64,000 nucleotides of DNA from Heptranchias perlo (GCF_035084215.1 NC_090340.1:5456001-5520000); one strand, 5' to 3'; shown: positions 21,236 to 55,691, counted from the first letter of the stretch. Made by a program: numbers and translations. Notes: a model not told the origin generated them from the letters alone.

Positions 21236-21290
21236 ATGTTTCTGAGTGGAGCTCTTTTGGGCATGTGTTTCCTGGGCATTTTCAATCGAG
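21236..21290 (+). CDS. Copy 1 exon 1, signal peptide (MFLSGALLGMCFLGIFNR)
   Basis: ATG plus a hydrophobic 18 aa, with phase-1 donor G|GTAGAT conserved in copy 2. Too short for the ORF track. Confidence 0.8.
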
Positions 21291-24200
21291 GTAGATTTCT
21301 ATTTTTTTTTGTTATAAATTAACCTTTCACAAACTTTCCTGAACAAGATACAACACATGAAGTCGATCTTATAGTTGATATAAAATGGAGCAATGTTTTG
21401 GTGCTTTAATTTGATGTAATTTTAGCATGTGATGTGATTGTCAGACGGAAACAATTGGACGAACAAAGTGATGTTATTCATGTTAATTCAGCCAGGAAAC
21501 ACTTTCAGGAACTGGAGAATCATTCTAATAGTTAGGAACATAGAATTATTAATTTACCAATGAACTCGACGCACGTTATTATTTTGGTCGTGCAGATCAC
21601 TTCCCTATATATGAATTATTTAACCTGAGTGCGCATCTTTTGTTGATAGTTACTGTGGACATTTCGGGCAAGGTGATGCCAGGCATTGTACAAAAGACGG
21701 CGCTCAGAGGTACAAAGGTTACCTTCCGATGTCCTTTCCCCTTCGATCTCGATCATTCAAACATAATCCTTTACTGGTGGAGAGATGGTAATAAGACCTT
21801 CCTACAAGAAGACAGCAGAAAACAGTTCATTGTAAAGAAAGGCGGTGCCTACCTTCACCTCCTGAATGTGAGTGTCCCGGACGCCGGAACGTATTTCTAT
21901 GTAGCCAAATATCAGGATAAAACGGTTGTAAAAGGAACTGGTGTGCAACTTGTTGTATATGGTAAGTGTCGCTGGAATTGGACAGGTGAAGCGTTTAGTC
22001 GCGCTGAAGCTGTGGTTGATATTCAAACCGCGTTTAGCAAAGAATTTCAACATGAAAATGTCCTATTAATAAAAAGGTACAGCTTTCTACTTGTTCATAA
22101 AAATACGGAAACATTCCCAGTTCAAGAATCTCTGAAGAATGTGACGACTGACGCATGACATGAATTGTGATTTAATTTTGTGTTTATGAAGGAAAGTCAT
22201 CTCGAGGCTGAAGGCTAAGGCGCTTTTTCAATTATTGCACCCACTGCCTAAAAGAATAGTATTGATATTATTCGCAGTGTTATGCTTAAAGGCCCAATAC
22301 CTTATTTGGAAAGAACAGGGAAATTCCCATTCCAGTCATTTAGACGGCGCGCTTCCAGTTTCTGCCATGCAGGTAAAGTTCCTGAACAGCCGTTCGGCAG
22401 AACTAGTGAAATGCACCCGTTAAAGTAAGTGCCGCCGTCCAGCCACAGGTTCGAAGTCGATCCGCTCCGCACATAAGATGAAAATGTTCTTCATGTAACA
22501 ACAGAAGGCGTCCTGTACAGCAGTTCAACTATATCAGGTCGATTCGAACAGATTGGTATGAAAAAGCACAGCCTCGCTGTTGCAAATCTGTGTTGTTAAA
22601 TCTAACGGTGATGCGTCATTACAACAGGAGCGGAACTCGGAAAATAACGTGTGGAGAATCAATGGAGAAAAATCTAGATTGGGCTCCAGTCAGGATCAAT
22701 AATTATCATCGATACAACTACGATGCCACGAAACAACTGTTGATTATTTTATGAAAACGGATAGGATAGAGAATAAGTGTAGAAAATATTTTGCTTCATC
22801 TCTTTTTGCTCTTTTCCATTTAGTTGGCCCCGTTCCCCTGAAGATTGTCTCCACGGCATCCGAAGGGGCTTCATCTGCTTCTCTGCGGCTCCAGTGCAGA
22901 ACGGCTCCTTTTTACCCAAAGGATTTTAACCTCACCTGGCATAAAAATGGTACCGAAATTGTGACTGGATTTAGAACTGAACAACAGGCAAACACAGAGG
23001 GACTGTATGAAGTTATCAGCTCCTTACAAGAGATACGGCCAATCCAGCGCGGCACTGTTTATACCTGTCAAGTATATCACGTTTCAAACTCAATACCAGC
23101 AAATGTCAACTATACTGTTGGCAACGAAGGTAACATTATAGCATACTTGGTACTTTTATGTTGCCTGGTCACGCAGTAGTCGAATTTCCATTGCAGATAC
23201 TGTGGGATGCGTTTATTGTAATTGATTTGCATATTATTATGTCATCTTCGAAATCCACAAGCAGTTTAGAAATGTGCACAGCAATAATATAGCACGAATC
23301 ATGGGTCGGGAAGGATTCAACGTTCCAAAGTTAAATTAATGGAACACCGCTAATTAAAGTTTAAAGTCAGGCACAATATTAAAATGTATAGAGAGTTGAA
23401 AACAGCGGGCTGAGGCTACTGCGAAGAAGACTGTAAACAATTTCAAGAGGATGTAGGCAGCTCAGCAGATTTAGCAGAATCAACTCGGATGAAATTGCAT
23501 GCGTAAATATAAGAGGCGATATCGTTTGGTAGGATGAATGACAGCTCATACATGACAAATGGGGAAAAATAAATGAGTTAAATAGCTGAGCGATTCAGGG
23601 GTCGGGTCCATAAATATTTAAAAGTGTCAGGACAATAAAGCTGGGGAAAGTACCTTTTAGAAATCGGGACTTAGGGTTTAAAGGCAATGAGTTAACGCTA
23701 AACCGATACACATCGTCGGTTAGACTGTATTTAGAATATTGTGTTTATATTTGGGCAACTTACTGTGTGAATAATATTAAGAACATAGATAAAATATTTT
23801 TACTGAAGTAGTGTCAAGGATGCAGCATATCAGTTAAAAGGGGAAACAAAGAGATAAGGAGGGGCTTCATATCCTCGAATGGAGAAAGTTAAGAAGAGAT
23901 CTGCTTGAGATGTTCAAGACTTCGAAGGAGAAATGGAAAAAAAAATCTGATCAGTGAATCGGTTACCAGATGGCATACATTTAGGGTCATTACCAAAAGG
24001 AGGCAGGGAGCGGATATGGTTATTTTTTTTACCGACAACCATAGGAATTGTATGAAGTTCTCAGCTGCTTCCAGCAACCTGTAAAGAGCGGGATAGTTCA
24101 TACGTTTCTAGTTGCTCCTGATTCTCTCCCAATTCCAGCCAGTCTCAGCGACGCTGTTAACAACAAATGCAATGTTCAGACATACAGCACAATGAGAATG

Positions 24201-25605
24201 TCGCGGGTTTGGGAGGTGCTGTCAACGAAGAATTACCAAGATGCTGCAGTGCATCCTATGGATGGTACACACTGCAACCACAGTGCGCCGGTGGTGAAGT
24301 GAGTGAATGTTTAGGGTGGTGGATGAGGTGCCAATCAAGTGGGCTGCTTTGTCCTGGATGGTATCAAGCTTCTTGAGTGTTGTTGGAGCTCCACTCATCC
24401 AGGCAAGTGGAGAGTATTCCATCACACTCCTGACTTGTGACTTGTAGATGGTAGAAAGGCTTTGGGGAGTCACTCGGCGAGACACTCGCTGCAGAATACC
24501 GAGCCTCTGACCTGCATTATAGCCACAATATTTATGTGACTGGTCCAGTTAAGAGTCTGGTCAATGGTGAACCCCAGGATGTTGATGGCTGGGGATTCCA
24601 CGATGGTAATGCCGTTGAATGTCAAGGATTGGTGGTTAATCTCTCTCCTGTTGGAGATGGTCATTGTCTGGCGCGAATGTTACTTGCCACTGATCAGCCC
24701 AAGCCTGGACCCTGTCCAGGACTTGCTGTATGTGGGCACAGACTGCTTCATTATCTGAGTGGTTACAAATGGAACTGAACACTGTCCAATCATCAGTGAA
24801 CATCCCCATTTCTGATCTTATGTTGGAGGGAAGGTCATTGATGAAGCAGCTGAGGATGGTTGGACCCAGGACACTGCCCTGAGGAACTCCTGCAGCAATA
24901 TCCTGGGGCTGAGTTGATTGGCCTCCAACAACCACTAACATCTTCCTTTGCTGCAGTTGAAACAGAAAAGTCGCAGTGGCGACTGCTGTTTGAAATAGGA
25001 ACGCCGAAATACGGCATTAGAGGCAGCTGGACGCTTGGTCAGGGAAAACAGTGCAAGGAAATTCAAGAATGTTATGCTTTTCCAACCTGGTCAGATCCAG
25101 CACTAGTTCTATCCAAATTTAAGATCGCATTCCATTAATTGGCTGCGAATTTTTTTCCTCGCTCCTATAAATTCGCTTCGAAAGGTATCGTTTGATCATT
25201 GTATCTGGAGACTTTCTAATTATTTAAATGTTTTCTTTAGATTTTATTTATAGTATCGCTAAAAAACAAGAGAGGGAAAAAATATTTACAAATCTATCAC
25301 GATTTGATACAGTACTCAGAGGAATTCTTTACTCAGTGTGCTTTAACTTCAAAAGAAGATCCTGTGCGAGATTATATTGTATATCAAAGAAAGTATAAAC
25401 CGTCAAAGTTAAATTGTTTCGCATGTGTCCAGAAGAAAAAAATATAATCTTTTTGAAATGGTTTCTGGTTGTTTGCTGTACTTTTTTTCCAGATTACCAT
25501 TCTGTCCGCCCTGTCCACCTAATGTATCGATCCATAGTTGGGATATTGGTAATTATTCTACTAACGATGATCATCCTCAACCATGTTACATCAGATAACC
25601 TCTAA
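21236..25605 (+). CDS. Ig-superfamily receptor, copy 1 (leader-VJ-C1-TM, 261 aa); join(21236..21290,21650..21961,22824..23129,25493..25605)
   Basis: Four exons of 55+312+306+113 = 786 nt are joined by phase-1 GT-AG introns and stay in frame. Exon lengths are identical in the paralog at 50874-55691. The V domain lacks its second canonical Cys, so function is less certain than for copy 2. Confidence 0.88.
21650..21961 (+). CDS. Copy 1 exon 2, V-type Ig domain with germline J-like G strand
   Basis: Acceptor TGATAG; motifs VTFRC, LYWWR, LHLLNV, DAGTYFY and KGTGVQLVV; donor G|GTAAGT. Confidence 0.92.
22824..23129 (+). CDS. Copy 1 exon 3, C1-set Ig domain
   Basis: LQCRTAPFYPKDFNLTW...GLYEVISSL...YTCQVYH carries the C1 hallmarks FYP and YxCxVxH. 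Pyrimidine tract plus TAG acceptor; G|GTAACA donor. Confidence 0.93.
23385..24110 (+). mobile_element. Old, heavily degraded CR1 fragment in intron 3 of copy 1
   Basis: Residual similarity to the CR1 RT C-terminus (for example TTAGAATATTGTGTTTATATTTGG, about LEYCVxxW). Confidence 0.55.
24190..24955 (-). mobile_element. Family B LINE fragment in intron 3 of copy 1
   Basis: GVPQGSVLGPTILSCFINDLPS and MEYSPLAWMSGAPTTLKKLD; homologous to 5380-6493. Confidence 0.9.
25493..25605 (+). CDS. Copy 1 exon 4: stalk, transmembrane helix with Arg, short tail
   Basis: Acceptor TTTTTTTCCAG; DYHSVRPVHLMYRSIVGILVIILLTMIILNHVTSDNL*; a donor GTAAGA lies 2 nt after the stop. Confidence 0.88.
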
Positions 25606-25754
25606 ATGTAAGAGATTTTCAAAGCACAATTATAATCTTAAACAACATTTTTCAATTTATAACATAGAAGGAATGTGTGACATATGATTATCAATTCTAG
25701 CGATTACTATTCAGTAAACACAAAATGACGACATAATGAGACATGCCTTGTATC

Positions 25755-28700
25755 CGTAGGATCATACAGCGCAGAAGGAGGCCATTCCAACCAACGATCC
25801 TTTTTCGGTACTTTGATAGAACTATGCAATTAGTCCCACTCTCCTGGTCTTTCTCCATAGCCCTGCATTTTTTTTCTTTTTCAATTATTTATTCAATTCC
25901 CTTTTGAAAGTTAATAATGAGTATGTTTCCACCGCCCTTGTAGGCAATGCAGTCCAGATAAAAGAAAACGCACTGTGTAAAGAAAAAACTCATCATTCCC
26001 TCTGGTTCTCGAGCCTCGCCATATAACTGAAGTCCCCCGTACCTGGTATAAGTTTAGTCAATCTCTTCTGCACTCTCTGCAAGGCATTGACATTCTTCCT
26101 AACGTGTGGTGCCCAGAATTGGACACAATACTCCAGGTTTAGCCTCACCAGTGATTGATAAATGCTTTGTATATCTCCAAAAATCCGTTATGCTTCATTT
26201 ATGCCATACCAATTTCTGTATTAAATTTCAGCTGGAAGTTATTCCTGTTTTTCAGTTATTCTGCATATAACACTTACCAGTCCTGGATTCGATACCAAAT
26301 TGTAATTCACTTCACGGGGTATACCACTAGGCTCCTCCTTCTCCGTGCGGTTCCAAAATCCCTTGATTCCCTTACAGTACAAAATCTATCGATCTCAGCT
26401 TTGAATGTGCGAATCGACTCAACAGCCAAAGCCCTCGGCGGTAGAGAATTCCAAAGATTCACAACCATCTGAGTAAAGAAATTCCTCCTCATCTCAGACT
26501 TAAATGGCTGACCCCTTATCCTGAGACTATGCTTCCTATATCTAGACTGTCCAGCAAGGGAAAACAGCCTTTCAACATCTACCCTATCAAATCCTCTAAG
26601 AATTTTATGCATTTCAATGTGATCACCTCTCATTCTTCTAAACTCCAGAGAATTTTACTCAATCTCGCCTCATACGAAAACCCTCTGATCACAGGGATCA
26701 ATCTAGTGAAACTACATTGTACCGCTTCTAAAGCAGATATATCGTTCCTTAGGTAAGGACACCAAACCCGTACACAGTAATCCAGGTTTGGTCTCATCAA
26801 AGCCCTGGACAATTGTAGCAAGACTTTTTTACGCTTGTACTCCAACCCCATTGCAATAAAGGCCAACGTACCATTTGACTTCCTAATTACTTGCTGTACC
26901 TATATGTGAACGTTTTGTGTTTCGTGTGCAAGGACACACAAATCTCTCTGAACACCAACATTTAATAGTTTCTCACCATTTAATAACATTCTGTTTTTCT
27001 ATTCTTCCTACATAAGTGAATAAACTCAATCTCCCCACATTACACTCCATCTATCACATTCTTACCAAATCACTTAATCTGTCTATATCACTTTTCAGAA
27101 TCTTTGTGTCATCCTCACAGCTTACTTTCCCACCTAACTTTGTATCGTGGATGCGAGGTGTATCGAGGAAACTATTCTTCCGTCAGTTGCTGGATATATT
27201 GCTCGATTGGTGAAGGGGCCTGAGATTGACCGACTAAGTCGACCGTGTTTTTGTAATAAAATAGTGTTGGTTCAATATTTTTCATTGCTTACTTTCCTGT
27301 TCCAAACTTTTCAAACGTTTTTTCTTACATAATTACAAATTTCTTGACAGCTGTGCTCAGAATTTCGCAGATTCTGCATTTTTCTTCCATGGGCTTTACA
27401 CCTTCAGGGCCATATACAAACGATATGGAATTTTAGGATAGAAAGTTCCACACATTTGACAGGAGACCCCCTTGCAATAAAGTCCAACATACCATTTGCC
27501 TTCCCAATTGCTTGCTGTACCTGCATGTTAACTTTCCGTGCTTCGCATACATGGACGCCCGACTCTTTCTCAACACCAATATTTAATAGTTTCTCACCAT
27601 TTAAAAAACATATTTTGTTTTTCCATTCTTCCTACCAAAGGAATAACCTCGCATTTCCGCATGTTATACTCCATCTGCCACCTTCTTGCCCACTTACTTA
27701 ACCTCACTATTTCCCTTTGCAGATTCTTTGTGTCCTCCTCACGGCTTGCTTTCCCACCTAGCTTTTTATCGTCAACAAACTTGGATAAATTATACTCGGT
27801 CCATTCATTTGAATCATTAATATAGATTGTAAATAGCTGAGGCACAACACTGATCTTTGCTGCTCCCCACTATTTACAGCCTGCCCATCAGAAATTGACC
27901 CGTTTATTCCTACTCTATCTTTTCTGACAATTAACCAATCCTCCATTCATGCTAATATATTACGCATAACTCCATGAACCCTTATCTTGTGTAACAATCT
28001 TTTGTATGTCAGCTTATTAAATGCCTTCTGAAAATTCAAATAGGCGAAATCCACTCGTTCCCATTTATCTACCCTGCTAGTTAAATTCACAAATAAGTCA
28101 TAGATTTTTTCATAAAACCATGTTTGACTCTGTCTAATCATATTATGATTTTCTAAGTGCCCTGTTACCACTCCCTTAATAATGGATTCCAGAATTTTCC
28201 AGACGACTGATGTCAGGCCAACTGGCCTGAATTTCCCTGTTTTCTCTCTCCCTCTTTTCTTGACTAGCGGTGCTGCATTTCCTATCTTACAATCCGCTGG
28301 GTCCGTTCTCGAATCTAGAGAATTTTCGAAGATCACAACTAATGTGTGTAACATCTCTGCAGCCACCTCTTTTAGAACCCTAAGATGTAGGACATAATGT
28401 CCAGGAGATTTGTCGTCATTTTGTCCCATTAATTTCTCCAGTACCTTTCATTTACTAATATTAACTACTTTAAGTTCCTCACTCTCATTAGATCATTGGT
28501 TCCCCATAATTTCTGGTATGATTTTGTGTCTTCGATTGCGAAGACAGATACTAAATATTTGTTTAACATCTCTGTCATTGCCTTATTCTCCATCATAATT
28601 TCTCCTGTCTCAGCCACTAAGGGACCCACGTCTACTTTCGCTACTCTCTTCCCTTTTACATACTTGTAGAAGCTCTTACAATCTGTTTCATATTTCTTGC
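25755..28700 (-). mobile_element. Cluster of CR1 fragments (about 25755-26155, 26330-27145, 27465-28700)
   Basis: RT and C-terminal motifs RNFFTQMVVNLWNSLP, LDYCVRVW, SKFVDDKKLGG and FRPVGLTSVV. Confidence 0.85.
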
Positions 28701-29504: not shown

Positions 29505-29613
29505 ACGATTTGATGCTGATGAAAACCACGGCTTAGAATACTCCAAGAGTTAACATGAAAAGGCAATTTCTCAGCAACGAAGAGAATCACAATATTTGAA
29601 CGTGACCGGTTAG
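29505..29613 (+). pseudogene. Candidate vestigial cytoplasmic-tail exon with tyrosine motifs
   Basis: Acceptor TTTATTTCCAG. The phase-2 frame reads RFDADENHGLEYSKS*HEKAISQQRRESQYLNVTG*. AATAAA follows at 29821 and 29887. Confidence 0.5.
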
Positions 29614-31049: not shown

Positions 31050-33185
31050 ACCTCCTTCCTTCTATGGTTCACCATAACCGCTTCGAGTAAGTTCGAGACA
31101 CTTGATAGTTGAATAATCGGAACAGACTGTGGATTGTGTATACAGTATAGGCTTGAGATGCTCTTCCGACAGTTGGGTCAAGGACATTATCTTCTTCTTT
31201 ACCCAGCAACAAAGGGTTAACATGATAATCAATAACAGGATCTGTAAACTCACGATGCAAACGATGGGGTGCAAAACATTATTTGAAACTCCAGGCTAAC
31301 GCAGTCAAACCGAGCAACGACTACCACTGTGGCTGCTTAATATCATGTTCTATTCTCCTTTGGATCAACCGTATCTGATCTAAGTCGTCTTTAGTTTCCA
31401 AATGAGACTTCCAATCAATATCATTTAACTTATCCAATTCCTTCTTCACATGCTCAATATCTGTTAATTGGCTTGATATTTAGTCCCATATCCGCATTAA
31501 TAATCGAATAGTAATAATCCCCTACAGTCTTATTCCAATTAAAGCATTGTGCAACAGAGAACGAGGAACACTCACATATGCATATCGAACATAGCGTGCA
31601 CAAAACAATACATATGGTATAGTCTGACAATCGATCATATCGATGGCTACATTATAACACTTGGTTCTGAAGTATAACAGTCTATGTTCAGCATAAAATA
31701 ACATGGGCCTCACTCGTTTCCGCAAATGGGTTACAGTCACCCGAGTTACGTCCTCCCTTGTAGGCTGAATGGTTGGAAAGCATATCCATTTAAAGTAATT
31801 ATCCAGGCAACTTGTCACATGATACTGTGAAAAACTGCCTGTTGTGGTAGCAATGTCTGATCCCCAGCCTTTTTGGTCCGTAAAAATGTATCGGAAACCC
31901 CGTATTATCAGTCCTACATCAACGTATGGTTATAGCATTTCTTGGGTACCACACTGTGGAATTCACCAGAATTTTTATTTCCGTGCACAATCAGAACTGT
32001 AGAACACAGGAGGGTGAATTATCAATCGCAAACTGGCTAACGTTACTAGAGAGTTGACTCCGAACACAATAGGGTAGGCGAATGCTTGTGGTCTGTTGTA
32101 GCAACATTTTGTAGCTATCCATGATAACTTGTGTACCGAGACAGACGACAACCCAAGATACCTGCTTAGAAGGGTTAAAGAATTCGGAGTCAATGATCTC
32201 CATATTTTCCCATAAACCCTGTGATTCAGTCATTGACATGTTTACAAGCTCATGAGCCATGTCTGATTCAGCCCGGGGGGCACCTTTAATAGAGTAGACA
32301 ATTGCTCGTAGATCTTTACTCAAAGCTTGTAGTTGTTTCGCTAGGACCTCATTACTCATAGCATTAAGCGATGCCGTTCCCAGTCCTACTCCGGTCGCTA
32401 GGGTGTCCAGAAGATCACGTTTTACCCTAATTTGAACGCTGGATAAGGAATGTGAACAATTAACACACTTCCATGACACATCAAACAAAGAAATGGATAA
32501 GAAGCATGCACTATTTTCCAACACATAACTTGATACAATATACGATTCAGGTGGAGCAACGAAAAAATAAGACCTGACCTGATTTGGGCCACGCACATGT
32601 CGCGCGATGGCATTGTTGTACCACTTCCCGGTACAGCAGTAGTGTAGGTATCCACATTAGGGCAGCGCAAAGGGTTCACACTTATGGAGCCGACATCCTT
32701 TTACCTGCTGTTCCACACAGCATGTCAGGACAGTGGAAGTGTTACACATAACCTCCCAATATTGCCTGTGCACGTATGTGAAGTAAATACAGATATTCAC
32801 GGCAATATTCCACTGTTGGTTGAAAAATGTGTACGCGTCAGAGGTTTTATTATCATGCCACCACGCAGTGAGCAATACAATGAGGATGGTTCCATCATCA
32901 GCCAGTCACCAGACCACACCACATGGAGCCGGGCCCTTTTTGTGAACGATCTCATAATGGACATTTATTGTAACCAATCATAATAACCCCTACATTCCTC
33001 AGTGTACAGCTGAATAGACCGTACATGGGACAGTCTTCTTCGTATACGTATCAAGCCTGAATCGTTAATTAATTTACACCATTAGCATCCTGGCCTAAAT
33101 ACAACAGTAAGATAACACTCTCCTCGCATTTCCTTTTTGAAAGGATCTTGAGCCTGCCGTCCACAACTGATCTGTTGATTGTCAA
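31050..33185 (-). pseudogene. env: Orphan endogenous retroviral envelope (class I fusion protein), disrupted
   Basis: Furin site RVKR (32417-32428), then the fusion-peptide-like DLLDTLATGVGLGTASLNAM and a heptad (EVLAKQLQALSKDL). A Cys-rich ectodomain follows, then a second heptad (HVKKELDKL...IRLIQRRIEHD), W*SLLG and the TM LHPIVCIVSLQILLLIIMLTLCCWVKKK. Several frameshifts and stops. Confidence 0.85.
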
Positions 33186-33325: not shown

Positions 33326-33327
33326 CA

Positions 33328-42900: not shown

Positions 42901-44748
42901 AAAGGAAAGTATTCCATATGCCTTCTTAACCAACTTATCTACCTGTCATACTACCTACAAGGATCTGTAGACATGCATTCCAATGTCCCTCTCTTTTTCT
43001 ACACCTTTCAGTATCCTCCCATTTATTGTGTACTCCCTTGCCTTGTTTGCCCTCCCCAATCACATTACCTTACAATTCTCCGGATTGAATTCCATTTGCC
43101 ACTTTTCTGCCCACCTGATCACTCCATTGATATCGTCCTGCAGTCTATAGCTTTCTTCCTCACTATCAACCACACAAACATTTTTTGTATCATCTGCAAA
43201 CTTCTTAATCCTGCACCCTACATTTAAGTCCAAATCATTAAAATATATCACAAAAAGCAAGGGACAGAGTACTGAGCCCTACAGAACCCCAATGGAAACA
43301 GCCTTCCAGTCACATAAACACCCGTCGACCATTAACCTTTACTTTCTTCCACAGAGCCAATTTTGGATCCAACTTGCCACTCTCCCTTGGATCCCATGGG
43401 CTTGTACTTTTTTAACCAGTCTGCAACGTGGGACCTTGTCCAAAGCCTGGTAAAAATCCATGTGGACTACATCAAATGCACCACCCTCATCGACCCTCCG
43501 TGTTATCTCCTCAAGAAATTCAATCAAGTTAGTTAGACACGACCTTCTCTTACCAAATCCATGCTGCCTGTCCTTGATTTCCCCATGCCTTTCTGAGTGA
43601 TTGTTTAAACTGTCCCTCGGAATCGATCCCAACAATTTGCCCACAACCGAAGTTACACTGACTAGCCTGTAATCACTCGGTCCATCCCTCGCTCCCTTTT
43701 TAAACAATGGTACAGCATTAGAAGTCCTCCAAACCTTCATGACGAGCGGTGTTCCCCAGGGGTCGGTACGAATACCACTGCCTTTCTTGTTATATATTAA
43801 TGACTTGGACTTGAGTGTACAGGGCATAATTTCCAAATTTGCAGATGAAACAAAAGTTGGAAGTGTAATAAACAGTGAGGAGGATAGTGATAGATTTCAA
43901 GGGGATATAGACAGGCTGGTGGCATGGGCGGAGATGTGGCAGATGAAATTTAATGCAGAAAAATGCGAGATTTTATATTTCGGTAGGAAGGAAGAGGAGA
44001 GGCAATATGAACTAAAGATCACAATTCTAAAAGTGGTACAGGAACAGGGCGATTTGGGGGGATATGTACACAAATCTTTGAAGATGGTCGGGCAGGTTGA
44101 GAAAGCAGTTAAAAAATCACACGGAATCCTGGGTTTTATAAATGGAGGTATAAAATACAAAAGCAAAGAAGTCATGATGAACCTTTACAAAACACTGGTT
44201 CGACCACAACTGGAGTATTGTGTCCAATTCAGGGCACTGCACTGTAGGAAAGATGTGAAGGCCTTAGAGAGGGTGCAGAAGAGATTTACTCGAATGATTC
44301 CAGGGATGAAGGGCGTTAGTTACGTGGATATACTGGAGAAGCTGGCGTTGTTCTCTTTGAAGCAGGAAAGGTTGAGAGGAGATTTGATAAAGGTATTCAA
44401 AATCATGAAAGGCCTAGACAGAGTAGATAGAGAGAAACTATTCCCATTGGTGGAAGGGTCACGAATAAGAGGACATGGAATTAAGCTGATTGACAAAGGA
44501 ACCTAAGCTGACATGAAGAAACACTTTTTCACACAGCGAGTGGATAGGATCTAGAATACACTGCTCGAGGGGGTGGGGAAGGCATATTCAATCATGGCTT
44601 TCAAAAGGGAACTGGATAAATACATGAAAGGAAATAAAAAATTGCAGTGCGATGGGTAAAGGGCAGGGGAGTTGGACTTGCTGGATTGCTCTTGAATAGA
44701 GCCGAATGGCCATCTTCCGTGTTGTAACCTTTCTATGATTCTATGATT
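39960..44748 (+). mobile_element. Composite CR1 LINE (APE plus RT; internal duplication or two fused copies), interrupted by an antisense CR1
   Basis: VVAITETWL, GDFNYPNIDW, VPADWRIENVPPLFKKG, and a 255-aa RT C-terminal ORF at 43739-44506. Tail TTCTATGATTCTATGA at about 44731-44746. Confidence 0.9.
42279..43738 (-). mobile_element. CR1 LINE nested antisense inside the 39960-44748 CR1
   Basis: It has its own tail (ATCATAGAATCATAGAA at 42279) and RT motifs RSCLTNLIEF and KKFADDTK. The host sequence resumes at SGVPQGSV (43739). Confidence 0.88.
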
Positions 44749-45289: not shown

Positions 45290-48113
45290 ACTCGAGGGGA
45301 AGTTTGCAACAATTGGGAGAGCTGTCACACAGACCAGTCAAGCAACAGTCTGACATAGCCATACGCACAGAATCATATCTTTCAACCAAAGTCCCAGACT
45401 CCTCCATCACCATCCCTGTACATGACATGTCCCACCGGCAGGACAGCCCCACCAGAGGTGGTGGTACAATTATATGCAGTCAAGAGGGAGTGGCACTGGG
45501 AGTCATCAACATTGACATCGGACCCCATGAAGTCTCATGGCTTCATGTCAAACATGGGCAAGGAAACCTCCTGCTGATTACCAACTACCGCCCTCCCTCA
45601 GCTGATGAAAGAGTACTCCTCCATGTTGAGCAAAATTTGGAGGAAGCACTGAGGGTATCAATGACACAGAATGTACTCTGGGTGGGGGACTTCAATGCCC
45701 ATCACCAAGAGTGACTCGGTCGCACCACTACTGACTGAGCTGGTCGAGTCCTGAAGGATATAGCTGCCAGACAGGGCCTGCGGCAGGTGGTGAGCGAACT
45801 AACATGAGGGGAAAACCTAATTGACCTCGACTACATCAATCTACCTGTAACAGATGCTTCTGTCCATGACAGTATTGGTAGGAGTTATCACCGGACGGTC
45901 CTTGTGAAGACGAAGTCCCATCTTCACACTGAACACACCATCCCAATGTCTTGTGTGGCACTACCATCGTGCTAAATGGGATAGATTCAGAACAGATCTT
46001 GCCGCTCATAACTGGGCATTGACGAGGCACTGTAGGGCATCAGCAGCAGCATAATTGTTTCCATCACAATCTGTAACGTCATGGCACGGCATATCCCTCA
46101 CTCTACCATTACCAACAAGCCAGGAAATCAACCTCAGTTCAATGAGGAGTTTGGGTGAGCATACCAGGAGCAACACCAGGCGTACCTAAAAATGAGGTGC
46201 CAACCTGCTGAAGCTACAACACAGAACAATATACATGCTAAACAGCGGAACCAGTATGCTACAGACACAGCTAAGTGATCCCACAACCAACGGATGAGAT
46301 CAAAGCTCTGAAATCCTGCCATATTCAGTCGTGAATGGTGGCAGACGAATAAGCAACTAACGGGAGGAGGAGGCTATGTGAACACCCCCATCCTCAATGA
46401 TGGCAGAGCCCAGCACGTGAGTGCAAAAGGCATGACTGAAGCGCTTGCAACTATCTTCAGCCAGCAGTGCCGAGTGGACGATCCATCTCGGCCACATCTG
46501 GAGATCCCCACCATCACAGAAGTCAGTCTTCAGCTAATTCGATTTAATCCACGTGATATCAAGGCACGGCTGAGTGCACTGGATACAGCAAAGACTATGG
46601 GCACCGAAAACATAACGGCTGTAGTTCTGAAGACTTGTGCTCCAGAATTAGCCACTCCTCCAGCCAAGCTGTTCCAGTACATCTAAAACACTGGCATCAA
46701 ACCGACAAAGTGGAAATTTTGCACAAGTACGTCCTGTCCACAAAAAGTACGACAAATGCAATCTGGCCAATTACTGCCCCATCAGTCTACTCACAACCAT
46801 CAGCAAAGTGATGGAAGGTGTCGTTGACAACGCTATCAAGCGGCACTTACTCACCAATAACCTGCCGGCTGATGCTCAGTTTGGGTTCCGCCAGGACCAC
46901 TCGGCACAAGACTTCATTACAGACTTGGTCCAAACATGGACAAAAGAGCAGAATTCCAGAGGTGAGGTGAGAGCAATTCCATTTGACACCAAGGTAGCAT
47001 TTTACCGAGTGTAGCAGCAAAGAGCCCTGGTAAAATTGATGTCAATGCGAATCAGGGGGAAAACTCTCCAGTGGCTGGAGTCATACCGAGCACAAAGGAA
47101 GTTGGTATTGGTTGTTGGAGGCCAATCATCTCAGCCTCAGGACATTGATGCAGGAGTTCCTCAGGGCAGTGTCCTAGGCCCAACCACCTACAGCTGCTTC
47201 ATCAATGACCTTCCCTCCTTCATAACTTCTGAAGTGCGGTTGTTCACTAATGATTGCACAGTGTTCAGTTCCATTCGCAATGCCTCAGATAATGAAGCAG
47301 TGCAGCAAGAGCTTGACAACATTCAGGTTTGGGCTGATAAGTGGCAAGAACATTCACGCCAGAAAAGTTCCAGGCAATGCCCATCTCCAACAACATTGAG
47401 TCTAACACCTCCCCTTGACATTCAACCTCGTTACCATCACCGAAACACCAACATCAACAACCTGCGGGTCATCATTAACCAGAAACGCAACTCGTCCAGC
47501 CACATTAATACTGTGGCTACAAGAGCAGGTCAAAGGCTGGGTATTCTGTGACGAGTCACTCATCTTCTGACTCCCCAAAGCATTTCCACCATCCACAAGG
47601 TACAAGTCAGGAGTGTGATAGAATACTCTCCACTTGCCTGGATGAGCGCTGCTGCAACAACACTCAAGAAGCTCGACACCATCCAGGTCAAAGCAGCGCG
47701 CTTGACTGGCACCACACCTACTGCCTTAAACATTCACTCCCTCCACCACCGACGCACCGTGGCTGCACTGCGCACCATCTACAAGATGCACTGCAGCATC
47801 TCTCCAAAGCTTCTTCGACAGCACCTCCCAAACCAGCGACTCTACCACCTAGAAGGTTAAGGGTAGCAGGCACATGGGAACAGCACCGCTTGCACGTTCC
47901 CCTCCAAGCCACACACCATCCTGACTTGGAAATATATCGCCGTTCCTTCGCTGGGTCAAAATCCTGGAACTCCCTGCTTAACAGCACTGAGGGAATACTT
48001 TCACCACACTTGGTTCAAGAAGAAGGCTCACCACTATCGTCTCTAGGGCAATTAGGGATGGGCAATAAATGTTGGCCTTGCCAGCGACACCTACATTCCA
48101 TGAATGAATAAAA
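45290..48113 (+). mobile_element. Family B LINE, nearly complete but disrupted ORF2 (APE plus RT)
   Basis: TESYL, YRPPS, VGDFNAHH, QFGFRQDHS and GVPQGSVLGP motifs; 3' end CCATGAATGAATAAAAA. Confidence 0.9.
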
Positions 48114-50279: not shown

Positions 50280-50738
50280 TGTATAAAAGTAACCCGAAGA
50301 TAAATTTGAAACTGTACACAGATATTCCATTCGCGACCGAATTACCTCCTATCGCAAAATTGAATCGTTCTATCAAGTCATGGAACTGTAGGTCTATCCC
50401 CCAAACTATGGGACGCCCTCGCTCCAAATTGTGTTTGCTACACGACTTAGCCGTATAGATAGGACTTTTAGAACTCAGGCGATCCTCTTCAGGTCAACTA
50501 TAGTCTCAATAAACAGATGCTGCAGAATCAATTAGTTCTAAAAACACGGAAGACATACAATATTCGTCCCTCGTGGCTGGTAAAGAAATTTTGATTTGTG
50601 GACTTGTAAGCTCCATATACAATTTTAAAAAGCTCCACGGTTTTTGATATTAATACAGCCTCCTGGTTTCTGCTACCGTTTTTGCTCACAACTGCACCCG
50701 AAGTTCGTACCGTAAACGACATGCATTTCTCCAATCCA

Positions 50739-50805
50739 CAATTAAACAGTCATGTGATATCTGATGACACATAATTTTGAGATCATAATCGATACACAGC
50801 CGCCC
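50739..50805 (+). promoter_or_regulatory. Conserved proximal promoter block of receptor gene copy 2
   Basis: Identical 26-mer with the TCATGTGA E-box, plus a GC box, shared with 21099-21167. Confidence 0.6.
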
Positions 50806-50873
50806 ATTCCTCAAACCTTCCTCCATACTGTTTTAATTCACAGCGGATAATCTACCGTATTTCATTGCTCAAT

Positions 50874-50928
50874 ATGTTTATGAGTGGGTCACTTTGGCGC
50901 ATATATTTCCTGGGCATTTTCTATCCTG
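50874..50928 (+). CDS. Copy 2 exon 1, signal peptide (MFMSGSLWRIYFLGIFYP)
   Basis: Homologous to 21236-21290; donor G|GTAGAT. Confidence 0.8.
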
Positions 50929-53900
50929 GTAGATTTTTATTTTTATTCTAATATATTAATCGTTGCTGAGCAAGACACCACACTTGAAATTGATCTAATA
51001 GTTGACGTGCAGTCGGATATTGCTTTTTGCTGGTTTAATTTGATTTAATTTTTTGAAGTCATGTGTCTCTTGCCGCATGTAAAATCTAGATGAGAACGCT
51101 AATGTTATTTATGGTAATTGAATGGGGAAACACATTTTGGATCTGGAGAATAATTATGATAGTTAGTTAATTCCTAATGTACCCATGGACTGGATGCGCG
51201 ATAATATTTTGGTGGTGCATATCATCTTTCGCATATATTAATTACTTAATCAGTGTGTCTCCTTTTTTGATAGTTGCTGTGGACACTTCGGGCAAGGTAA
51301 CTCCGGGTATTGTACAAAAGAAGGCGCTCAGAGGTACAAACCTTATGTTGCAATGCCCTTTCCCTTTCGACCTCGATCATTCAAACGTAAATGTTTACTG
51401 GTTTAGAAAGGATAGCGAAACCCTCCTGCAAGATGATAGCAGAAAACAGTTTCACATAAAGAAAGGCGGCGCCTACCTTCACCTCCTGAATGTGACCGTC
51501 CTGGACTCCGGAATTTATCAGTGTGTAGCCAAAGATAAGGATCGAACGGTTGGAAAAGGAACTTTTGTACAAGTTGTTGTATATGGTAAGTGTCGGTGGA
51601 ACTGGAATCGGGAAGAGTTTATTTGGTGTCGATATTCATACTACGTTTAACAAGGAATTTCAATAAGAAAATGCCTTGTCTATAAAACAGTACAGCTTTC
51701 ATAATTGTTTATAACGACACGTGTTCAAAAATAAAGAAACTTTCCCAGTTCCAGAGTCTCTGAAAAAATGTGAAAAATGACCGAAATCTCCAATTGTGAT
51801 TAAATGTTATGTTTATCAAGGAAAGTAAATTCAAGGCTGGGAACCAAAACGCTTCTTTTCAATTTTAGCACTAAGGCCCAGTGTCTTATTTGGACATTTA
51901 TACGGTGCGCTTCCAGTTTCTGCGATCCAGATACAATTCCTGGATCGCTGTTCGGTGGAACTGGCAAGACGCATACCATAAAGCTGGTCCCGTAGTCCAG
52001 ATGGAGGGTCCGAAATCGCTCCTTTCATGTCCAGATGGAGAAAAAGTTGTCCATGTAACCACAGAACGCGACCTGTACTGTTGCAGCAGTTTAATAACAG
52101 AATGCCGATTCGAACACATTGATACGAATAAAAAGAGACCTAATATTCGAAATAAATGCTGTTAAATATAACAATGATACGCCAGTACCGTAGAAGAGAA
52201 AGTTCGGGAAATAACGTCTCTAGATGGATTTAAGAATATTACAGAGAGTTACGTAGAATGTACAGCACAGAAACAGACCATTCGGCCGAACAGCTCCATG
52301 CCGGTGTTTATGCTGCACATGAGCCTCCTCCCTCCCTACTTTATCTACTCCTATCAGCATATTATTTTAATCTGTTCTCCCTTGTGTGTTTATCTAGCTT
52401 CCCCTTAAATGCATCTACGTTCGTAACCTTACCTATTCCTTTTAGTGGTGATGTCCACATTGTAACCACTCTCTGGATAAACATGTTTCTCCTGAATTGC
52501 CATTTGGATTTATTAATGACTATATGATATTTATGGCACCTAGTTCTGGTCTCAACCTTAAAGACCTCTATCGAATCACTCCTTAATCTTCTATTTTCAG
52601 AAGAAAAGAGCGCCAGCTTGCTCAATCTATCCCGATAGGTATAACCTCTCAGTTCTGTTATAGTCCTAGTAAATATTTTTAAACGTTCTCTAGTGCCTCT
52701 ATATACTTTTTATAATATGGAGACCAGAACTGTTCACAGTACTCCAAGTGCGGCGTAAACAAAGTTCTATACAAGTTTAACATAACTTCTCTGTTTTTCA
52801 ATTCTATCTCTCGAGAAATGAACCCCTGAGCTTGGGTTGCTATTGCTATGGCCTTATTAACCTGAATCGCTACTTTTTATTGATTTGTGTATCTGTACCC
52901 CCAGGTCCCTCAGCTCCTCAACCCCATTTAGATTCTTGCTGTTCAAGCAGTATGTGCCCCCTTATTCTTCCTACCCAAATATAATACTTCACACTTATCT
53001 ATATTTATATTCATTCCCCCAATTACACACTTATTCTGCCAGTTTATTAATGTTCTCCTGCATTTTGACGCAGTTCTCCTCTGTATTGACCATACCTCCC
53101 AATTTGGTGTCATCCGCAAATTTTAAAATTGTACCCGTGACACGTTCCCTGGATTTGTTCTATCTGCCTTTTTTAAAGATAGGAATCACATTAACTGTCC
53201 ACCAGTCCTCTTGAACAAATCACTTTTCTATTGAATTTTTAAACATATGTAATAGTGCCTCTGCTATCTGTTCCCTAACTTATTTTAATATGCGTGGATG
53301 CAATCCATCCAGACCAGGGGATTTACCCTTTGTAGGTTTGATTAGTTTATCAATTATCTCCCCCCATTCTATCTTAAATGTCTTCATATCCTTTTTGGTC
53401 TCTTGTTCTAATGCCATGCCCGCCACATTAGTCTCCCCGGTAAACACCGAGGCAACATAATTATTTAATATTTGTGGCACTTCACTTTCATTACCTGTGA
53501 GGTTTTCGTTTGTATCCCTTAGTGGCCTTATCCCTATCATGGTTTTTCTTTTGTTATTTACGTATGTGTAGAATACTTTACAATTTCTTTTTATATTCTT
53601 TGATAATTTAATTTCATAGTTTATCTTTGCCTTCCTAATTGTTTTCCTTAAACTCTTTCCTACCCTTTTTGTATACCCCTTTGTCATCCTCTCCTTTGTT
53701 GTTGGTGTGCTTAGTGTATGCCGTTTTCTTAGTTTCAACGTTGCCCTTATTTATTTATTCATCCATGGTGTATCAATACTTGTAAGTTTGAGCTTGCTTT
53801 TTCGTGGGATATATTTCTCTTGGACGCTTTTGGTCACCGTTAGAAATGTTTCCCACTGCTGTTCTAGTTATTTGTTTATTAGTAAGCTTTTCCAATTTAT

Positions 53901-55691
53901 TTTTCCTAGTGTCATTCTCATCCCTTGAAAATCAGCACTTTTTCCAATTTATTCCTTTGTTTTTTCTCTTACTTTTATCGTTCTCAATCTTTACCTTAAA
54001 TCTTATTATGTTGTGATTGATATTGCCTAGATATTGCCCGATGCTTACGTTTCCTATCTGTTCTGTTTCATTTCCCATTACGAGATCCAGCAGTGCTTCC
54101 TCCTTTGTTAGGCTTTTTACCTAGTGGATAAGAAAGGAGTCCTACAAATATTGTAAAAACTCAATTCCCTCTACACTTTTACCTACCTCATGGCAGATTA
54201 TTAGGGGATAGTTGAAATCTCCCATGATTATTATTCTACATAAATATAAGATAATAATTAAGAAATCCAATAGGGAATTCCAGGGAAACTCCTTTACTCA
54301 TTTTACATCTTTCCTTACACATTTCGTCCTCCAACTCCTTTCCACTATTAGGTGGTTTGTAGTATATGCCTGTTAGAGTGATCGATTCCTTCTTATCTTT
54401 CATTTCAATCCTTATGGATTCTGCTTCTATCCTTGCATATAACAGTAATATGCCAATAGTGTAGAAGACGAAGTTCGGGAAATGATTTCTGTAGATACAG
54501 TGAATAAAATTTAGTTTAGGCTACATTCAAGATAAATAATGATTGTCCGTACAACTACAATGCCCGGACGCAGGCACCGGTTAATTTTTGAGAAAAAAAT
54601 AGCAGACCATATACGGGTCAAATATTCTTCTTTATCTATTTTTGCTCGTTTCCGTTTAGCTGTCCCCGTTCCCTTGAAGATTGTCTCCACACCACCCGAA
54701 CGGACTTCATCTGCTTCTCTAAGACTCCAATGCAGAACAGCTCCTTTTTATCCGAAGGACTTTAACCTCACCTGGCATGAAAATGGTACCGAAATTGTGA
54801 CAGGAATTGAAACTGAACAACAGGCAAAGACAGAGGGACTGTTTGAAGTTATCAGCTACTTAGAAGTGACAGACCCAATCGAACGCGGCACTGTTTACAC
54901 CTGTCAAGTGTATCACGATTCAATCTCAATTCCAGCAAATGCCAACTACACCGTTGCTAACGACGGTAATATTATAGAACACGTGGTTCTTTTATCGATT
55001 TCAGAGATTCATTACCCAGTAATCGAGTTTCCATCAGAGATAATGGGTACAATCAAAAATATGTGGAAAGTGTTTACTGCAGTTGTTTGCATATCATTCT
55101 GTCACTTCCGAAGTCCAGTTTTACTTCAGCTCCCATGTGATGATTCCCATTCCGTTGGGCATTAGGATCTGATGAGGAATAAGTTGGTCGCAAGCAGTTT
55201 AGGTAATAGTGGACGCCAGTCCACATCGTAGTTTCCATAATTCACTCCATAACTAGCATAATAAGCAAGGAAAATAATGAGATAAATTAACACAGCGATA
55301 GATTGGACAGAAGAACCAAGTGATAATAAATAACATTAAATGCAAAATCCTATTCCATACTAAATCCTAGTCACACATCATCCCTGACGTCGCTGACCTA
55401 CATTGACTTCCAGTCCTCCAATGCCTCAATTTTTAAAAAATCATCTTCGTAATCAAAGCCCTGGATGGCCTCACCCCTCAATATCTCTATTTCTCTTTCC
55501 TGAAGAAACAATATCACCAGATTGATATGGTCTCAGGTTATGAGCTATGCATCATTGATTACCTTTTACCTTTTCCAGATTATCGCTCTGCCCTCCCCGT
55601 CCACCTGATTTATCGATCCACAGTGGGGGTACTGGTAATTATTCTACTAATGATGATCATCTTCAACCATGTTTCATCAGATAACATCTAA
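50874..55691 (+). CDS. Ig-superfamily receptor, copy 2 (leader-VJ-C1-TM, 261 aa), apparently intact; join(50874..50928,51274..51585,54660..54965,55579..55691)
   Basis: Exons of 55+312+306+113 nt, all joined by phase-1 GT-AG introns, in an open frame. All four canonical Ig Cys and both core Trp are present. Confidence 0.92.
51274..51585 (+). CDS. Copy 2 exon 2, VJ-type V domain
   Basis: LMLQC, VYWFRK, DSGIYQC and VGKGTFVQVVV (GxGT motif); TAG acceptor and GTAAGT donor. Confidence 0.93.
52240..54436 (-). mobile_element. CR1 LINE inserted in the V-C intron of copy 2
   Basis: GKSPGLDGLHPRILK and RRNMFIQRVVTMW motifs, with an APE GDFNYP remnant near 54210. Absent from the copy 1 intron. Confidence 0.85.
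54660..54965 (+). CDS. Copy 2 exon 3, C1-set Ig domain
   Basis: LQCRTAPFYPKDFNLTW...YTCQVYH; TTTAG acceptor and G|GTAATA donor. Confidence 0.93.
55579..55691 (+). CDS. Copy 2 exon 4: stalk, TM with Arg, short tail
   Basis: Acceptor CTTTTCCAG; DYRSALPVHLIYRSTVGVLVIILLMMIIFNHVSSDNI*; donor AG|GTAAGA 2 nt after the stop. Not in the ORF track. Confidence 0.88.

What the first reader, a model, noticed from the sequence alone, without database searches (positions are those of the whole stretch)
21236..55691. Tandem pair of non-rearranging, antigen-receptor-like VJ-C1-TM genes
Seen in the sequence: two spliced genes with identical exon sizes (55/312/306/113 nt) encoding leader, V, C1, TM and a tail of about 9 aa. 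The V exon already contains a J-like G strand (copy 2 VGKGTFVQV, copy 1 VVKGTGVQL) and ends directly in a GTAAGT donor, with no RSS heptamer-nonamer. Established: C1-set domains are largely confined to Ig, TCR, MHC/b2m, tapasin, SIRP and a few B7-family members such as B7-H6. Germline VJ-C1 genes are discussed as relics of the pre-RAG antigen-receptor ancestor. Inference: this is a small multigene family of innate, TCR-chain-shaped receptors, probably in a cartilaginous fish. I cannot assign it to a named gene.
Basis: partly seen in the sequence, partly recalled or inferred. Interest (0 to 1): 0.9.

Follow-up and report, generated by a model that had tools for sequence, protein, structure and literature searches.

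The report
Shark SIRP-like V-C1 receptor pair
Two neighbouring, intact shark genes encode short-tailed surface receptors with one antibody-like variable and one constant domain; they belong to a large, apparently undescribed family of inhibitory and activating-type immune receptors in sharks, rays and chimaeras, and they do not rearrange.

Summary
Both copies have the exon structure 55/312/306/113 nt, all in phase 1, with GT/AG splice sites. There is no RSS after the V exon. Pfam assigns the domains to V-set and C1-set. Spliced contigs from a public run show all three junctions of copy 2.

The genome is Heptranchias perlo. RefSeq already models both genes as 261-aa proteins, with automatic names only ("NCR3LG1-like" and "uncharacterized").

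The pair is not a small family. It belongs to a chondrichthyan-wide multigene family of V(J)-C1-TM receptors. Most members carry ITIM-rich tails that align collinearly with the four-tyrosine tail of SIRP-alpha. A minority, including this pair, have a basic residue at the outer end of the TM segment, a [D/N]H motif at the inner end, and almost no tail.

My best reading is that these are tail-less, probably adaptor-coupled (activating) members of a SIRP-like paired-receptor family. Ectodomain comparisons do not resolve the family's nearest relative. Profile, structure and tree tests place it about equally far from SIRP, B7-H6, UrIg2 and Ig lambda.

Unchecked first-stage notes of this scan describe similar V(J)-C1-ITIM genes at many other places on the same chromosome.

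I found no paper describing the family. Verdict: a new variant of a known kind, of moderate interest.

The parts
21236..21290 (+). Copy 1 leader exon (ATG, 18 codons plus 1 nt, phase 1)
   Evidence: Sequence and GT donor. The translation equals residues 1-18 of RefSeq protein P0002.
21650..21961 (+). Copy 1 V(J) exon, 312 nt. Lacks the second canonical Cys (TAT at 21898-21900). J-like VVKGTGVQL. Ends in a GTAAGT donor.
   Evidence: Pfam V-set 26.3 bits. Equals residues 20-122 of P0002. No RSS.
22824..23129 (+). Copy 1 C1-set exon, 306 nt (YTCQVYH hallmark)
   Evidence: Pfam C1-set 44.7 bits. Equals residues 124-224 of P0002.
25493..25605 (+). Copy 1 stalk/TM/tail exon up to the stop codon (PVHLMYRSIVGILVIILLTMIILNHVTSDNL*)
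   Evidence: 81.8-83.7% nt identity to the copy 2 TM exon and its flank. Sequence read. Equals residues 226-261 of P0002.
50874..50928 (+). Copy 2 leader exon
   Evidence: An RNA-type contig joins 50927 to 51273, GT..AG.
51274..51585 (+). Copy 2 V(J) exon, 312 nt. Both canonical Cys present. J-like VGKGTFVQV.
   Evidence: Pfam V-set 34.1 bits, I-set 29.8 bits. In the AF2 model the G strand is interrupted at the GKG motif and no C'' strand is present. Joints at both ends.
54660..54965 (+). Copy 2 C1-set exon, 306 nt
   Evidence: Pfam C1-set 52.9 bits. A contig covers the whole exon and carries 29 and 30 nt of the V and TM exons at its two ends.
55579..55693 (+). Copy 2 stalk/TM/tail exon. The CDS ends with TAA at 55689-55691. 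The exon is spliced onward from a donor at 55693/55694.
   Evidence: Contigs in two runs cover 55578-55694 and continue for 147-166 nt that lie outside the stretch laid. AF2 places the TM helix at residues 232-259.
20688..21235 (+). Upstream flank of copy 1, conserved with 50323-50873 of copy 2 (part of a 72% identical block). Presumed promoter/5' UTR region.
   Evidence: blastn block 20688-22240 against 50323-51871. The function is an inference only.

Best explanation
The two genes are tail-less members of a large multigene family of germline-joined V(J)-C1-TM immune-type receptors. The family is found throughout cartilaginous fishes.

Most family members are inhibitory-type. They have a hydrophobic TM segment and a long tail with several ITIM-like tyrosines arranged as in SIRP-alpha.

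This pair is the other type. It has an Arg at the outer end of the TM helix, a conserved [D/N]H at the inner end, and 8-9 cytoplasmic residues. I infer that the two proteins sit on leukocytes as type I membrane proteins, bind a ligand through the compact V domain, and signal through an ITAM adaptor recruited by the TM arginine. That would make them the activating partners of ITIM-bearing siblings that have similar ectodomains.

Shown here: the gene structure, intact reading frames, spliced transcripts of copy 2, family membership, and purifying selection since the duplication.

Inferred: surface expression on immune cells, adaptor coupling, and ligand binding.
For: Structure and domains.

Spliced contigs show all three junctions of copy 2.

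Family:
- HMMER profile search gave 1650 hits at E<=1e-3 and 81 at E<=1e-30. About 60 are single-stretch V-C1-TM proteins of 220-450 aa.
- All 37 named proteins checked with strong scores are chondrichthyan: sharks, skates, rays and Callorhinchus.
- Five further family proteins are encoded on the same 66.5-Mb chromosome (P0013, P0014, P0033, P0157, P0176). One is the ITIM-bearing P0014, whose accession number directly follows that of copy 2.
- The GxG J motif, both Cys pairs and YxCxVxH are nearly invariant across the family.

Paired types:
- Tails with LTYAAL / TVYAQT / TEYAEL repeats contrast with the basic-TM...[D/N]H short-tail type. The second type recurs on at least four ectodomain clades of the tree (P0001-4, P0011, P0012, P0036, P0066) and in P0052, which is not in the tree.
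- P0001 and P0002 sit in a clade of 13 (100% SH-aLRT) that mixes ITIM-bearing and tail-less members from sharks and batoids.

SIRP link:
- The best non-chondrichthyan hit of the family profile is rodent SIRP-alpha, E=3e-38.
- SIRP-alpha V-C1 ranks fourth in the PDB profile search, 113 bits.
- BLASTP aligns the tail of a chimaera member collinearly with all four SIRP-alpha tyrosine motifs.
- Shuffle tests of tail alignments gave z = 8-11.6 for seven of the 15 members tested.

Selection between the two copies: dS is about 0.3; dN/dS is 0.58 for V and 0.36 for C1; pooled Fisher p=0.0006.
Against: - Adaptor coupling is inferred from the sequence alone. The Arg lies at the very edge of the TM helix, not inside it.
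- In the same clade, the same Arg-type TM occurs in Chiloscyllium P0004 together with a C-terminal ITIM-like VGYDAL. The TM type therefore does not strictly mean 'activating'.
- Both Heptranchias copies end in a TAA 2 nt before a donor that is still used. The short tail may therefore be a truncation of a longer-tailed form.
- Copy 1 lacks the canonical V disulfide and the first Gly of the J motif.
- Expression of copy 1, the tissue and the cell type were not tested.
- Ectodomain comparisons do not favour SIRP. Per-domain HMM scores outside the family are 30.7 bits or less for V and 35-51 bits for C1, and they are similar for SIRP-alpha, frog NCR3LG1-like and a multi-C1 shark protein.
- The structural aligner ranks human B7-H6 first: Z 15.1 and 26% identity, against SIRP-gamma Z 13.3 and 19%.
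- The C1 tree leaves the sister group unresolved.
Confidence: 0.6

Rival explanations
1. The genes are shark homologues of B7-H6 (NCR3LG1). They would then be V-C1 ligands displayed to NKp30-type receptors, not receptors themselves.
For: - RefSeq's automatic name for copy 2 and for several family members.
- The VIA-align search without Foldseek ranks human B7-H6 (4zso_E) first: Z 15.1, rmsd 3.0 over 182 residues, 26% identity.
- The best matches of the V exon to chains holding a single Ig domain in the PDB are PD-L1 V domains.
- The extended two-domain geometry matches ICOS-L, TM 0.55-0.67.
- A frog 'NCR3LG1-like' protein scores 50 bits on the family C1 HMM.
Against: - Family tails carry SIRP-alpha-like ITIM arrays, and a separate class has a basic-TM segment. 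These are receptor features.
- No B7-H6 chain appears among the 60 best PDB profile hits, whereas SIRP-alpha, UrIg2 and Ig chains do.
- Z values are nearly tied and depend on the predicted interdomain angle.
- In the C1 tree, frog 'NCR3LG1-like' and frog 'SIRP-beta-like' proteins group with each other, not with the shark family. The automatic names are therefore not informative.
Confidence: 0.12
2. The family is a direct surviving relative of the pre-RAG two-domain VJ-C1 antigen-receptor precursor. It would then be closer to Ig/TCR/UrIg than to SIRP or B7-H6.
For: - The family profile aligns in one stretch over FR3, J and C of an Ig lambda chain (70 bits). UrIg2 is the second-best PDB hit, 130 bits.
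- The leader is split, and the GxG G-strand motif is nearly invariant.
- The top Foldseek hits are Fab light chains, UrIg2 and TCR chains.
- A two-domain VJ-C1 precursor is explicitly postulated in PMC12227049 (Fig. 2 legend).
Against: - The V domain is compact, lacks C'', and scores almost as well as I-set.
- By itself the V exon finds no Ig or TCR V domain among its 60 best PDB hits.
- C1 scores to a multi-C1 shark protein, SIRP-alpha and frog proteins are all alike.
- The tree is unresolved.
- Linkage to the MHC or to the antigen-receptor complex was not tested. Unchecked scan notes place B2M, MHC class I genes and an IgM cluster on other sequence pieces.
Confidence: 0.12
3. One or both genes are decaying, truncated copies of an inhibitory receptor and have no function of their own.
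For: - The stop codon lies 2 nt before a donor that is still spliced to downstream exon(s).
- Clade relatives P0003 and P0004 read on into longer tails.
- Copy 1 has lost the second V-domain Cys and the first Gly of the J motif.
Against: - Both reading frames are intact after dS of about 0.3.
- dN/dS is below 1, pooled Fisher p=0.0006.
- All splice sites are intact.
- Copy 2 is transcribed and correctly spliced.
- Copy 1 has the shorter terminal branch of the two (0.15 against 0.22).
- The TM type is conserved across several ectodomain clades.
Confidence: 0.1

Closest known systems
SIRP family (SIRP-alpha, -beta, -gamma)
   Same: - An N-terminal V domain with a J-like G strand, followed by a true C1-set domain (PMC2785349).
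- Inhibitory members whose four tail tyrosine motifs align collinearly with those of SIRP-alpha.
- Sibling genes with a basic TM residue and almost no tail.
- Clustered multigene organisation.
- SIRP-alpha is the best named non-chondrichthyan hit of the family profile.
   Different: - One C1 domain instead of two. A skate member has two, but they are near-identical recent duplicates.
- A compact V domain without C''.
- Only about 19-30% identity.
- An Arg at the edge of the TM segment. SIRP-beta1 is known to have a mid-membrane Lys (my own knowledge, not tested here).
- The C1 domains form their own clade and are not nested in SIRP.
- A 2026 survey dates the SIRP family to Tetrapoda (PMC13262535).
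B7-H6 (NCR3LG1)
   Same: - The same V + C1-like + TM layout and phase-1 exon plan.
- Best structural-alignment match to the predicted ectodomain: Z 15.1, 26% identity.
- The source of RefSeq's automatic name.
   Different: - B7-H6 is a ligand with a different tail.
- It is not among the top 60 PDB profile hits.
- This family has ITIM arrays and basic-TM forms, which are typical of receptors.
UrIg / UrIg2 (non-rearranging shark VJ-C1 genes, PMC12227049)
   Same: - A germline-joined VJ exon with a split leader, followed by C1-set domains, in elasmobranchs.
- The UrIg2 V-C1 region is the second-best PDB profile hit.
   Different: - UrIg and UrIg2 have three to eleven C domains, form disulfide-linked homodimers, and are single genes expressed mainly in liver or gill.
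- Here there is one C1 domain, no stalk Cys in this pair, and a large multigene family with signalling tails.
Ig light chains and TCR chains
   Same: V-J-C1 order. The profile alignment runs continuously through FR3, J and C-lambda. The fold matches.
   Different: - No RSS, and V and J lie in one exon.
- The V domain is short.
- The CDR3-equivalent loop is fixed and short.
- There is no evidence of chain pairing.
Paired innate IgSF receptor families (NITR of bony fish, KIR/LILR, CHIR) and chicken PRARP. Compared from my own knowledge; the PRARP paper was not held.
   Same: Clustered, fast-evolving families. Each mixes ITIM-bearing members with charged-TM, short-tailed members that have similar ectodomains. 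NITR and PRARP also have a J-like V domain.
   Different: NITR, KIR and LILR have I- or C2-type membrane-proximal domains, not C1-set.

Membership tests
SIRP family | N-terminal V-set domain with a J-like G strand | tested here: met
   Pfam V-set 26-34 bits. The GxG motif is nearly invariant in the family. In the AF2 model the G strand is interrupted at GKG. However, the domain lacks C'' and scores nearly as well as I-set.
SIRP family | Two membrane-proximal C1-set domains | tested here: not met
   There is one C1-set domain, 45-53 bits. The family HMM finds a single C1 in almost all members. The two C1 domains of the skate member P0010 are near-identical recent duplicates.
SIRP family | Inhibitory members with the four-tyrosine ITIM tail of SIRP-alpha | tested here: met
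   Met for the family: the alignment is collinear and shuffle tests gave z = 8-11.6 for seven of the 15 members tested. Not met for this pair, which has only 8-9 tail residues.
SIRP family | Activating members with a basic TM residue and a short tail | tested here: met
   There is an Arg at the outer end of the predicted TM helix and the tail is NHVSSDNI. Adaptor binding itself was not tested.
SIRP family | Phylogenetic nesting with SIRP domains | tested here: inconclusive
   The family C1 domains form one clade (98% SH-aLRT) on a long stem. The positions of SIRP-alpha D2 and D3 are unresolved long branches. Per-domain scores are similar to those of other families.
SIRP family | Binding of CD47, and conserved synteny with the SIRP cluster | not testable with these tools
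The scan notes contain no marker genes of the human SIRP region.
B7-H6 / B7 family | V domain plus a B7-type C domain | tested here: inconclusive
   The C domain scores 53 bits as C1-set but only 23 bits as the CD80-like and BTN-like C2-set models. B7-H6 is the top structural match, Z 15.1, yet it is absent from the top 60 sequence-profile hits.
B7-H6 / B7 family | Acts as a ligand of NKp30 | not testable with these tools
   No binding assay was possible. The family tails look like receptor tails.
Rearranging antigen receptors (Ig/TCR) | V and J in separate segments flanked by RSS | tested here: not met
   The J-like strand is part of the V exon, which ends in a GTAAGT donor. No heptamer or nonamer is present. 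The RNA joins V directly to C1.
UrIg / UrIg2 | A VJ domain followed by three or more C1 domains, forming a disulfide-linked homodimer | tested here: not met
   There is a single C1 domain, and this pair has no Cys in the stalk. The dimer prediction gave no verdict.
Paired activating/inhibitory IgSF receptor families (generic) | Closely related ectodomains on ITIM tails and on charged-TM short tails, encoded in one gene cluster | tested here: met
   The clade of 13 mixes both types. Both tail and TM classes are present. Several members lie on one chromosome.

The most novel reading that the evidence does not exclude
The family to which this pair belongs is the living two-domain VJ-C1-TM lineage postulated as the precursor of UrIg and of the rearranging antigen receptors. 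It would then be the sister of Ig/TCR/UrIg, not of SIRP or B7-H6. The SIRP-alpha tail module would already have been attached to such a receptor in the gnathostome ancestor.
Probability: 0.12. Interest if true: 0.85.

Novelty: new variant of a known kind. Interest (0 to 1): 0.5.

Why it matters
C1-set domains mark the antigen-recognition machinery of jawed vertebrates. Non-rearranging VJ-C1 genes (SIRP, UrIg, UrIg2) are the main clues to what the RAG transposon invaded (PMC2785349, PMC12227049).

This family is large and is present across all sampled chondrichthyan groups. It has a V(J)-C1 ectodomain and a SIRP-alpha-type four-tyrosine tail. That would move a SIRP-like signalling module back to the base of jawed vertebrates, whereas a recent survey dates the SIRP family to tetrapods (PMC13262535).

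It would also give sharks a candidate paired inhibitory/activating receptor system of the kind that KIR, LILR and NITR provide in other vertebrates.

The two genes in this window are only the tail-less members. The value lies in the family, which exists so far only as automatic gene models with inconsistent names.

Tried and rejected
- Homodimer prediction of the P0001 ectodomain. It returned no verdict (score 0.00), which is no evidence either way.
- tblastn of the cytoplasmic tails of relatives (P0003, P0004, P0005) against the window, to find the exon(s) downstream of the stop. Nothing significant was found. Paralogue-conserved blocks downstream did not identify the exon either.
- The look-up of encoding contigs for the neighbouring gene.
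- Three papers were not held: PMC10530332 (UrIg 2023), PMC3709836 (B7H6/NKp30 2012), and the chicken PRARP paper.
- Literature searches for a description of this shark family found none.
- Only copy 2 was laid, so copy 1 expression is untested.
- Rejected as family assignments: tapasin-related, MHC class II beta and Ig lambda. These are automatic names carried by individual family members.
Searches used single exons by reference, or an open reading frame with the 'region' option. After that I used the database proteins P0001 and P0002, whose segments match each exon translation.


Full report
**The observation**

The window holds two genes on the + strand with the same four coding exons.

| Exon | Copy 1 | Copy 2 |
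|---|---|---|
| Leader | 21236-21290 | 50874-50928 |
| V | 21650-21961 | 51274-51585 |
| C1 | 22824-23129 | 54660-54965 |
| TM | 25493-25605 | 55579-55691 |

The exon sizes are 55/312/306/113 nt. All introns are phase 1, with AG acceptors and GT donors. tblastn with each exon finds no third copy in the window.

Pfam calls the second exon V-set (26 and 34 bits, with I-set close behind) and the third exon C1-set (45 and 53 bits, against 23 bits or less for the B7-type or butyrophilin-type C2-set models).

The J-like strand lies inside the V exon: VGKGTFVQV in copy 2 and VVKGTGVQL in copy 1. The V exon ends in GTAAGT, and no heptamer or nonamer follows it.

Copy 1 has Tyr (TAT at 21898-21900) where the second canonical V cysteine should be. 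It has also lost the first Gly of the GxG motif.

The rest of the window consists mostly of reverse-transcriptase fragments of LINE-like elements.

**Transcripts**

I laid contigs of three runs from one sample on 50800-55800. They contain the joints 50927/51273, 51584/54659 and 54964/55578, each with GT..AG ends. One contig holds the whole C1 exon and has 29 and 30 nt of the V and TM exons at its two ends. All three junctions of copy 2 are therefore used.

Three further points came from the same call:
- A V-to-TM joint (51584/55578) skips the C1 exon. Because every exon is phase 1, this isoform stays in frame.
- The TM exon does not end the mRNA. Contigs run to 55694 and continue for 147-166 nt that lie outside the stretch laid. 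The TAA at 55689-55691 therefore sits 2 nt before a donor that is in use.
- The contig differs from the window at 51404 and 51455. Both differences are non-synonymous (F62L and H79Q).

**Identity of the genes**

I searched exon by exon, by reference, and did not join the exons myself. Both domains found two 261-aa RefSeq proteins of Heptranchias perlo on a 66.5-Mb chromosome:
- P0001 (XP_067853505, "natural cytotoxicity triggering receptor 3 ligand 1-like") is copy 2.
- P0002 (XP_067853503, "uncharacterized protein") is copy 1.

Each exon translation is a contiguous block of these proteins.

Close relatives exist in Scyliorhinus torazame, Chiloscyllium punctatum and Heterodontus francisci.

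**The family**

A profile of five proteins, searched against 1.84 billion representatives, gave 1650 hits at E<=1e-3 and 81 at E<=1e-30. About 60 of these are single-stretch V-C1-TM proteins of 220-450 aa.

All 37 named proteins that I looked up with strong scores come from sharks, skates, rays or the chimaera Callorhinchus. Their automatic names are inconsistent: SIRP-alpha-like, SIRP-beta-1-like, NCR3LG1-like, tapasin-related-like, Ig lambda-like, CD276 homolog, and even MHC class II beta-like.

Five further members lie on the same H. perlo chromosome. One is the ITIM-bearing P0014, whose accession number directly follows that of copy 2. First-stage notes of this scan, which are unchecked, list similar genes from about 2.2 Mb before this window to 10.1 Mb beyond it.

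Across 66 aligned members, these residues are nearly invariant or invariant: the V cysteines, the C-strand Trp, the YxC motif, the GxG motif, and the C1 hallmarks including YxCxVxH.

**Two signalling types**

Most members have a TM segment of the LIAGCAGG...LLLLIIIGK type. Their tails are long and carry repeated LTYAAL / TVYAQT / TEYAEL motifs.

A minority have an Arg or Lys at the outer end of the TM segment, about 19 hydrophobic residues, a [D/N]H at the inner end, and a short tail. This group includes the present pair.

The second TM type recurs on at least four ectodomain clades of the tree.

P0001 and P0002 lie in a clade of 13 representatives with 100% SH-aLRT support. It includes sharks and batoids and mixes ITIM-bearing with tail-less members. 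This is the pattern of a paired-receptor family.

Since their duplication, the two copies have diverged to dS of about 0.3. dN/dS is 0.58 for V and 0.36 for C1, and the pooled Fisher test gives p=0.0006. At least one copy, and probably both, has therefore stayed under constraint.

**Comparison with known families**

SIRP. The family profile's best named hit outside chondrichthyans is rodent SIRP-alpha, at E=3e-38. BLASTP aligns a chimaera member with SIRP-alpha through C1, TM and the whole tail. All four tyrosine motifs fall in the same order and at similar spacing. Shuffle tests of the tail alone gave z = 8-11.6 for seven of the 15 members tested.

Ig and UrIg2. In the PDB profile search, the best hit is a modelled antibody chain (2rcj_C, deposited as IgA1 heavy chain). 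Its best-aligned stretch reads as lambda light-chain FR3-J-C and matches the profile in one piece (70 bits). UrIg2 is next (130 bits), and SIRP-alpha ranks fourth (113 bits, V plus D2). No B7-H6 chain appears in the top 60.

Predicted structure. The AlphaFold2 model has mean pLDDT 87. It shows a V domain without a C'' strand, a G strand interrupted at GKG, a C1 domain with a D strand, and a TM helix at residues 232-259. Foldseek returns Fab light chains, ICOS-L, UrIg2 and TCR chains. The Foldseek-independent aligner puts human B7-H6 first (Z 15.1, 26% identity), with SIRP-gamma at Z 13.3. Many rows in that list are nearly tied.

Per-domain scores and tree. Per-domain HMM scores outside the family are low and similar to one another. 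V scores are 30.7 bits or less. C1 scores are 35-51 bits for frog NCR3LG1-like, SIRP-alpha D3 and a multi-C1 shark protein. A C1 tree makes the family one clade (98%) on a long stem and does not resolve its sister group.

My conclusion is that this is a distinct chondrichthyan lineage of the VJ/C1 group. It is SIRP-like in its tail and in its paired organisation. Its ectodomain is about equally distant from SIRP, B7-H6-like, UrIg and Ig.

**Mechanism**

I take the pair to be tail-less members that signal through an ITAM adaptor recruited by the TM arginine. They would be the counterparts of ITIM-bearing siblings.

That step is inferred. Three observations weaken it:
- The Arg lies at the edge of the helix.
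- A Chiloscyllium relative combines the same TM type with a C-terminal ITIM-like motif.
- The stop codon before a donor that is still used suggests that the short tail arose by truncation.

**Literature**

- SIRP-alpha's V-C1-C1 ectodomain has long been read as a link to antigen-receptor precursors (PMC2785349).
- UrIg and UrIg2 are the described non-rearranging shark VJ-C1 genes, and a two-domain VJ-C1 ancestor is postulated for them (PMC12227049; PMC10751288).
- A 2026 survey dates the SIRP family to Tetrapoda (PMC13262535).

I found no paper describing this shark family. Three relevant papers were not held.

**Limits**

- The dimer prediction gave no verdict.
- Copy 1 expression, tissue distribution, adaptor binding and the ligand are all unknown.

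**Verdict**

The genes are already modelled in RefSeq. The family is a new variant of a known kind, SIRP-like paired V-C1 receptors, and is of moderate interest.

Noticed in passing
window 51584 to 55578 (joint): Contigs of run X1 join the V exon directly to the TM exon and skip the C1 exon (depth 15, against 25 for V-to-C1). All exons are phase 1, so this isoform would encode an in-frame V-TM protein.
   Followed up: partly
window 55689-55694: The stop codon TAA lies 2 nt before a GT donor that is used. Contigs in two runs continue for 147-166 nt beyond 55694, on sequence outside the stretch laid. The downstream exon(s) were not located. Copy 1 has the same TAA at 25603-25605.
   Followed up: partly
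window 51404 and 51455: The spliced contig differs from the window at two V-exon positions (T>G and C>A). Both changes are non-synonymous (F62L, H79Q). This may be allelic variation in the V domain.
   Followed up: partly
window 21898-21900: Copy 1 has TAT (Tyr) in place of the second canonical V-domain cysteine, which is at least 90% conserved in the family. Its J-like motif has also lost the first Gly. Even so, its terminal branch is shorter than that of copy 2.
   Followed up: partly
window 61612-63951 (-), 43739-44506 (+), 5336-5968 (+), 47036-47551 (+): Open reading frames with reverse-transcriptase (RVT_1) matches, one of them 779 aa long. LINE-like elements fill most of the space between and around the two genes.
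   Followed up: partly
window 31991-32596 (-): This 201-aa ORF lies inside the stretch that another first-stage note calls an orphan retroviral env. Pfam found no family for it.
   Followed up: partly
window 29505-29613: Another first-stage note calls this stretch a fossil ITIM exon behind copy 1. tblastn with the tails of relatives gave no significant match here, and blastn found no counterpart behind copy 2.
   Followed up: partly
proteins P0010 (Amblyraja radiata) and P0174 (Hemiscyllium ocellatum): One skate family member has two near-identical C1 domains (V-C1-C1), arising from a recent internal duplication. One shark gene model reads V-C1-V-C1, which may be two neighbouring genes merged by the annotation.
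   Followed up: partly
proteins P0123 and P0139 (frogs): In the C1 tree, frog proteins automatically named 'SIRP-beta-1-like' and 'NCR3LG1-like' group with each other. The two automatic names do not separate real lineages there.
   Followed up: no
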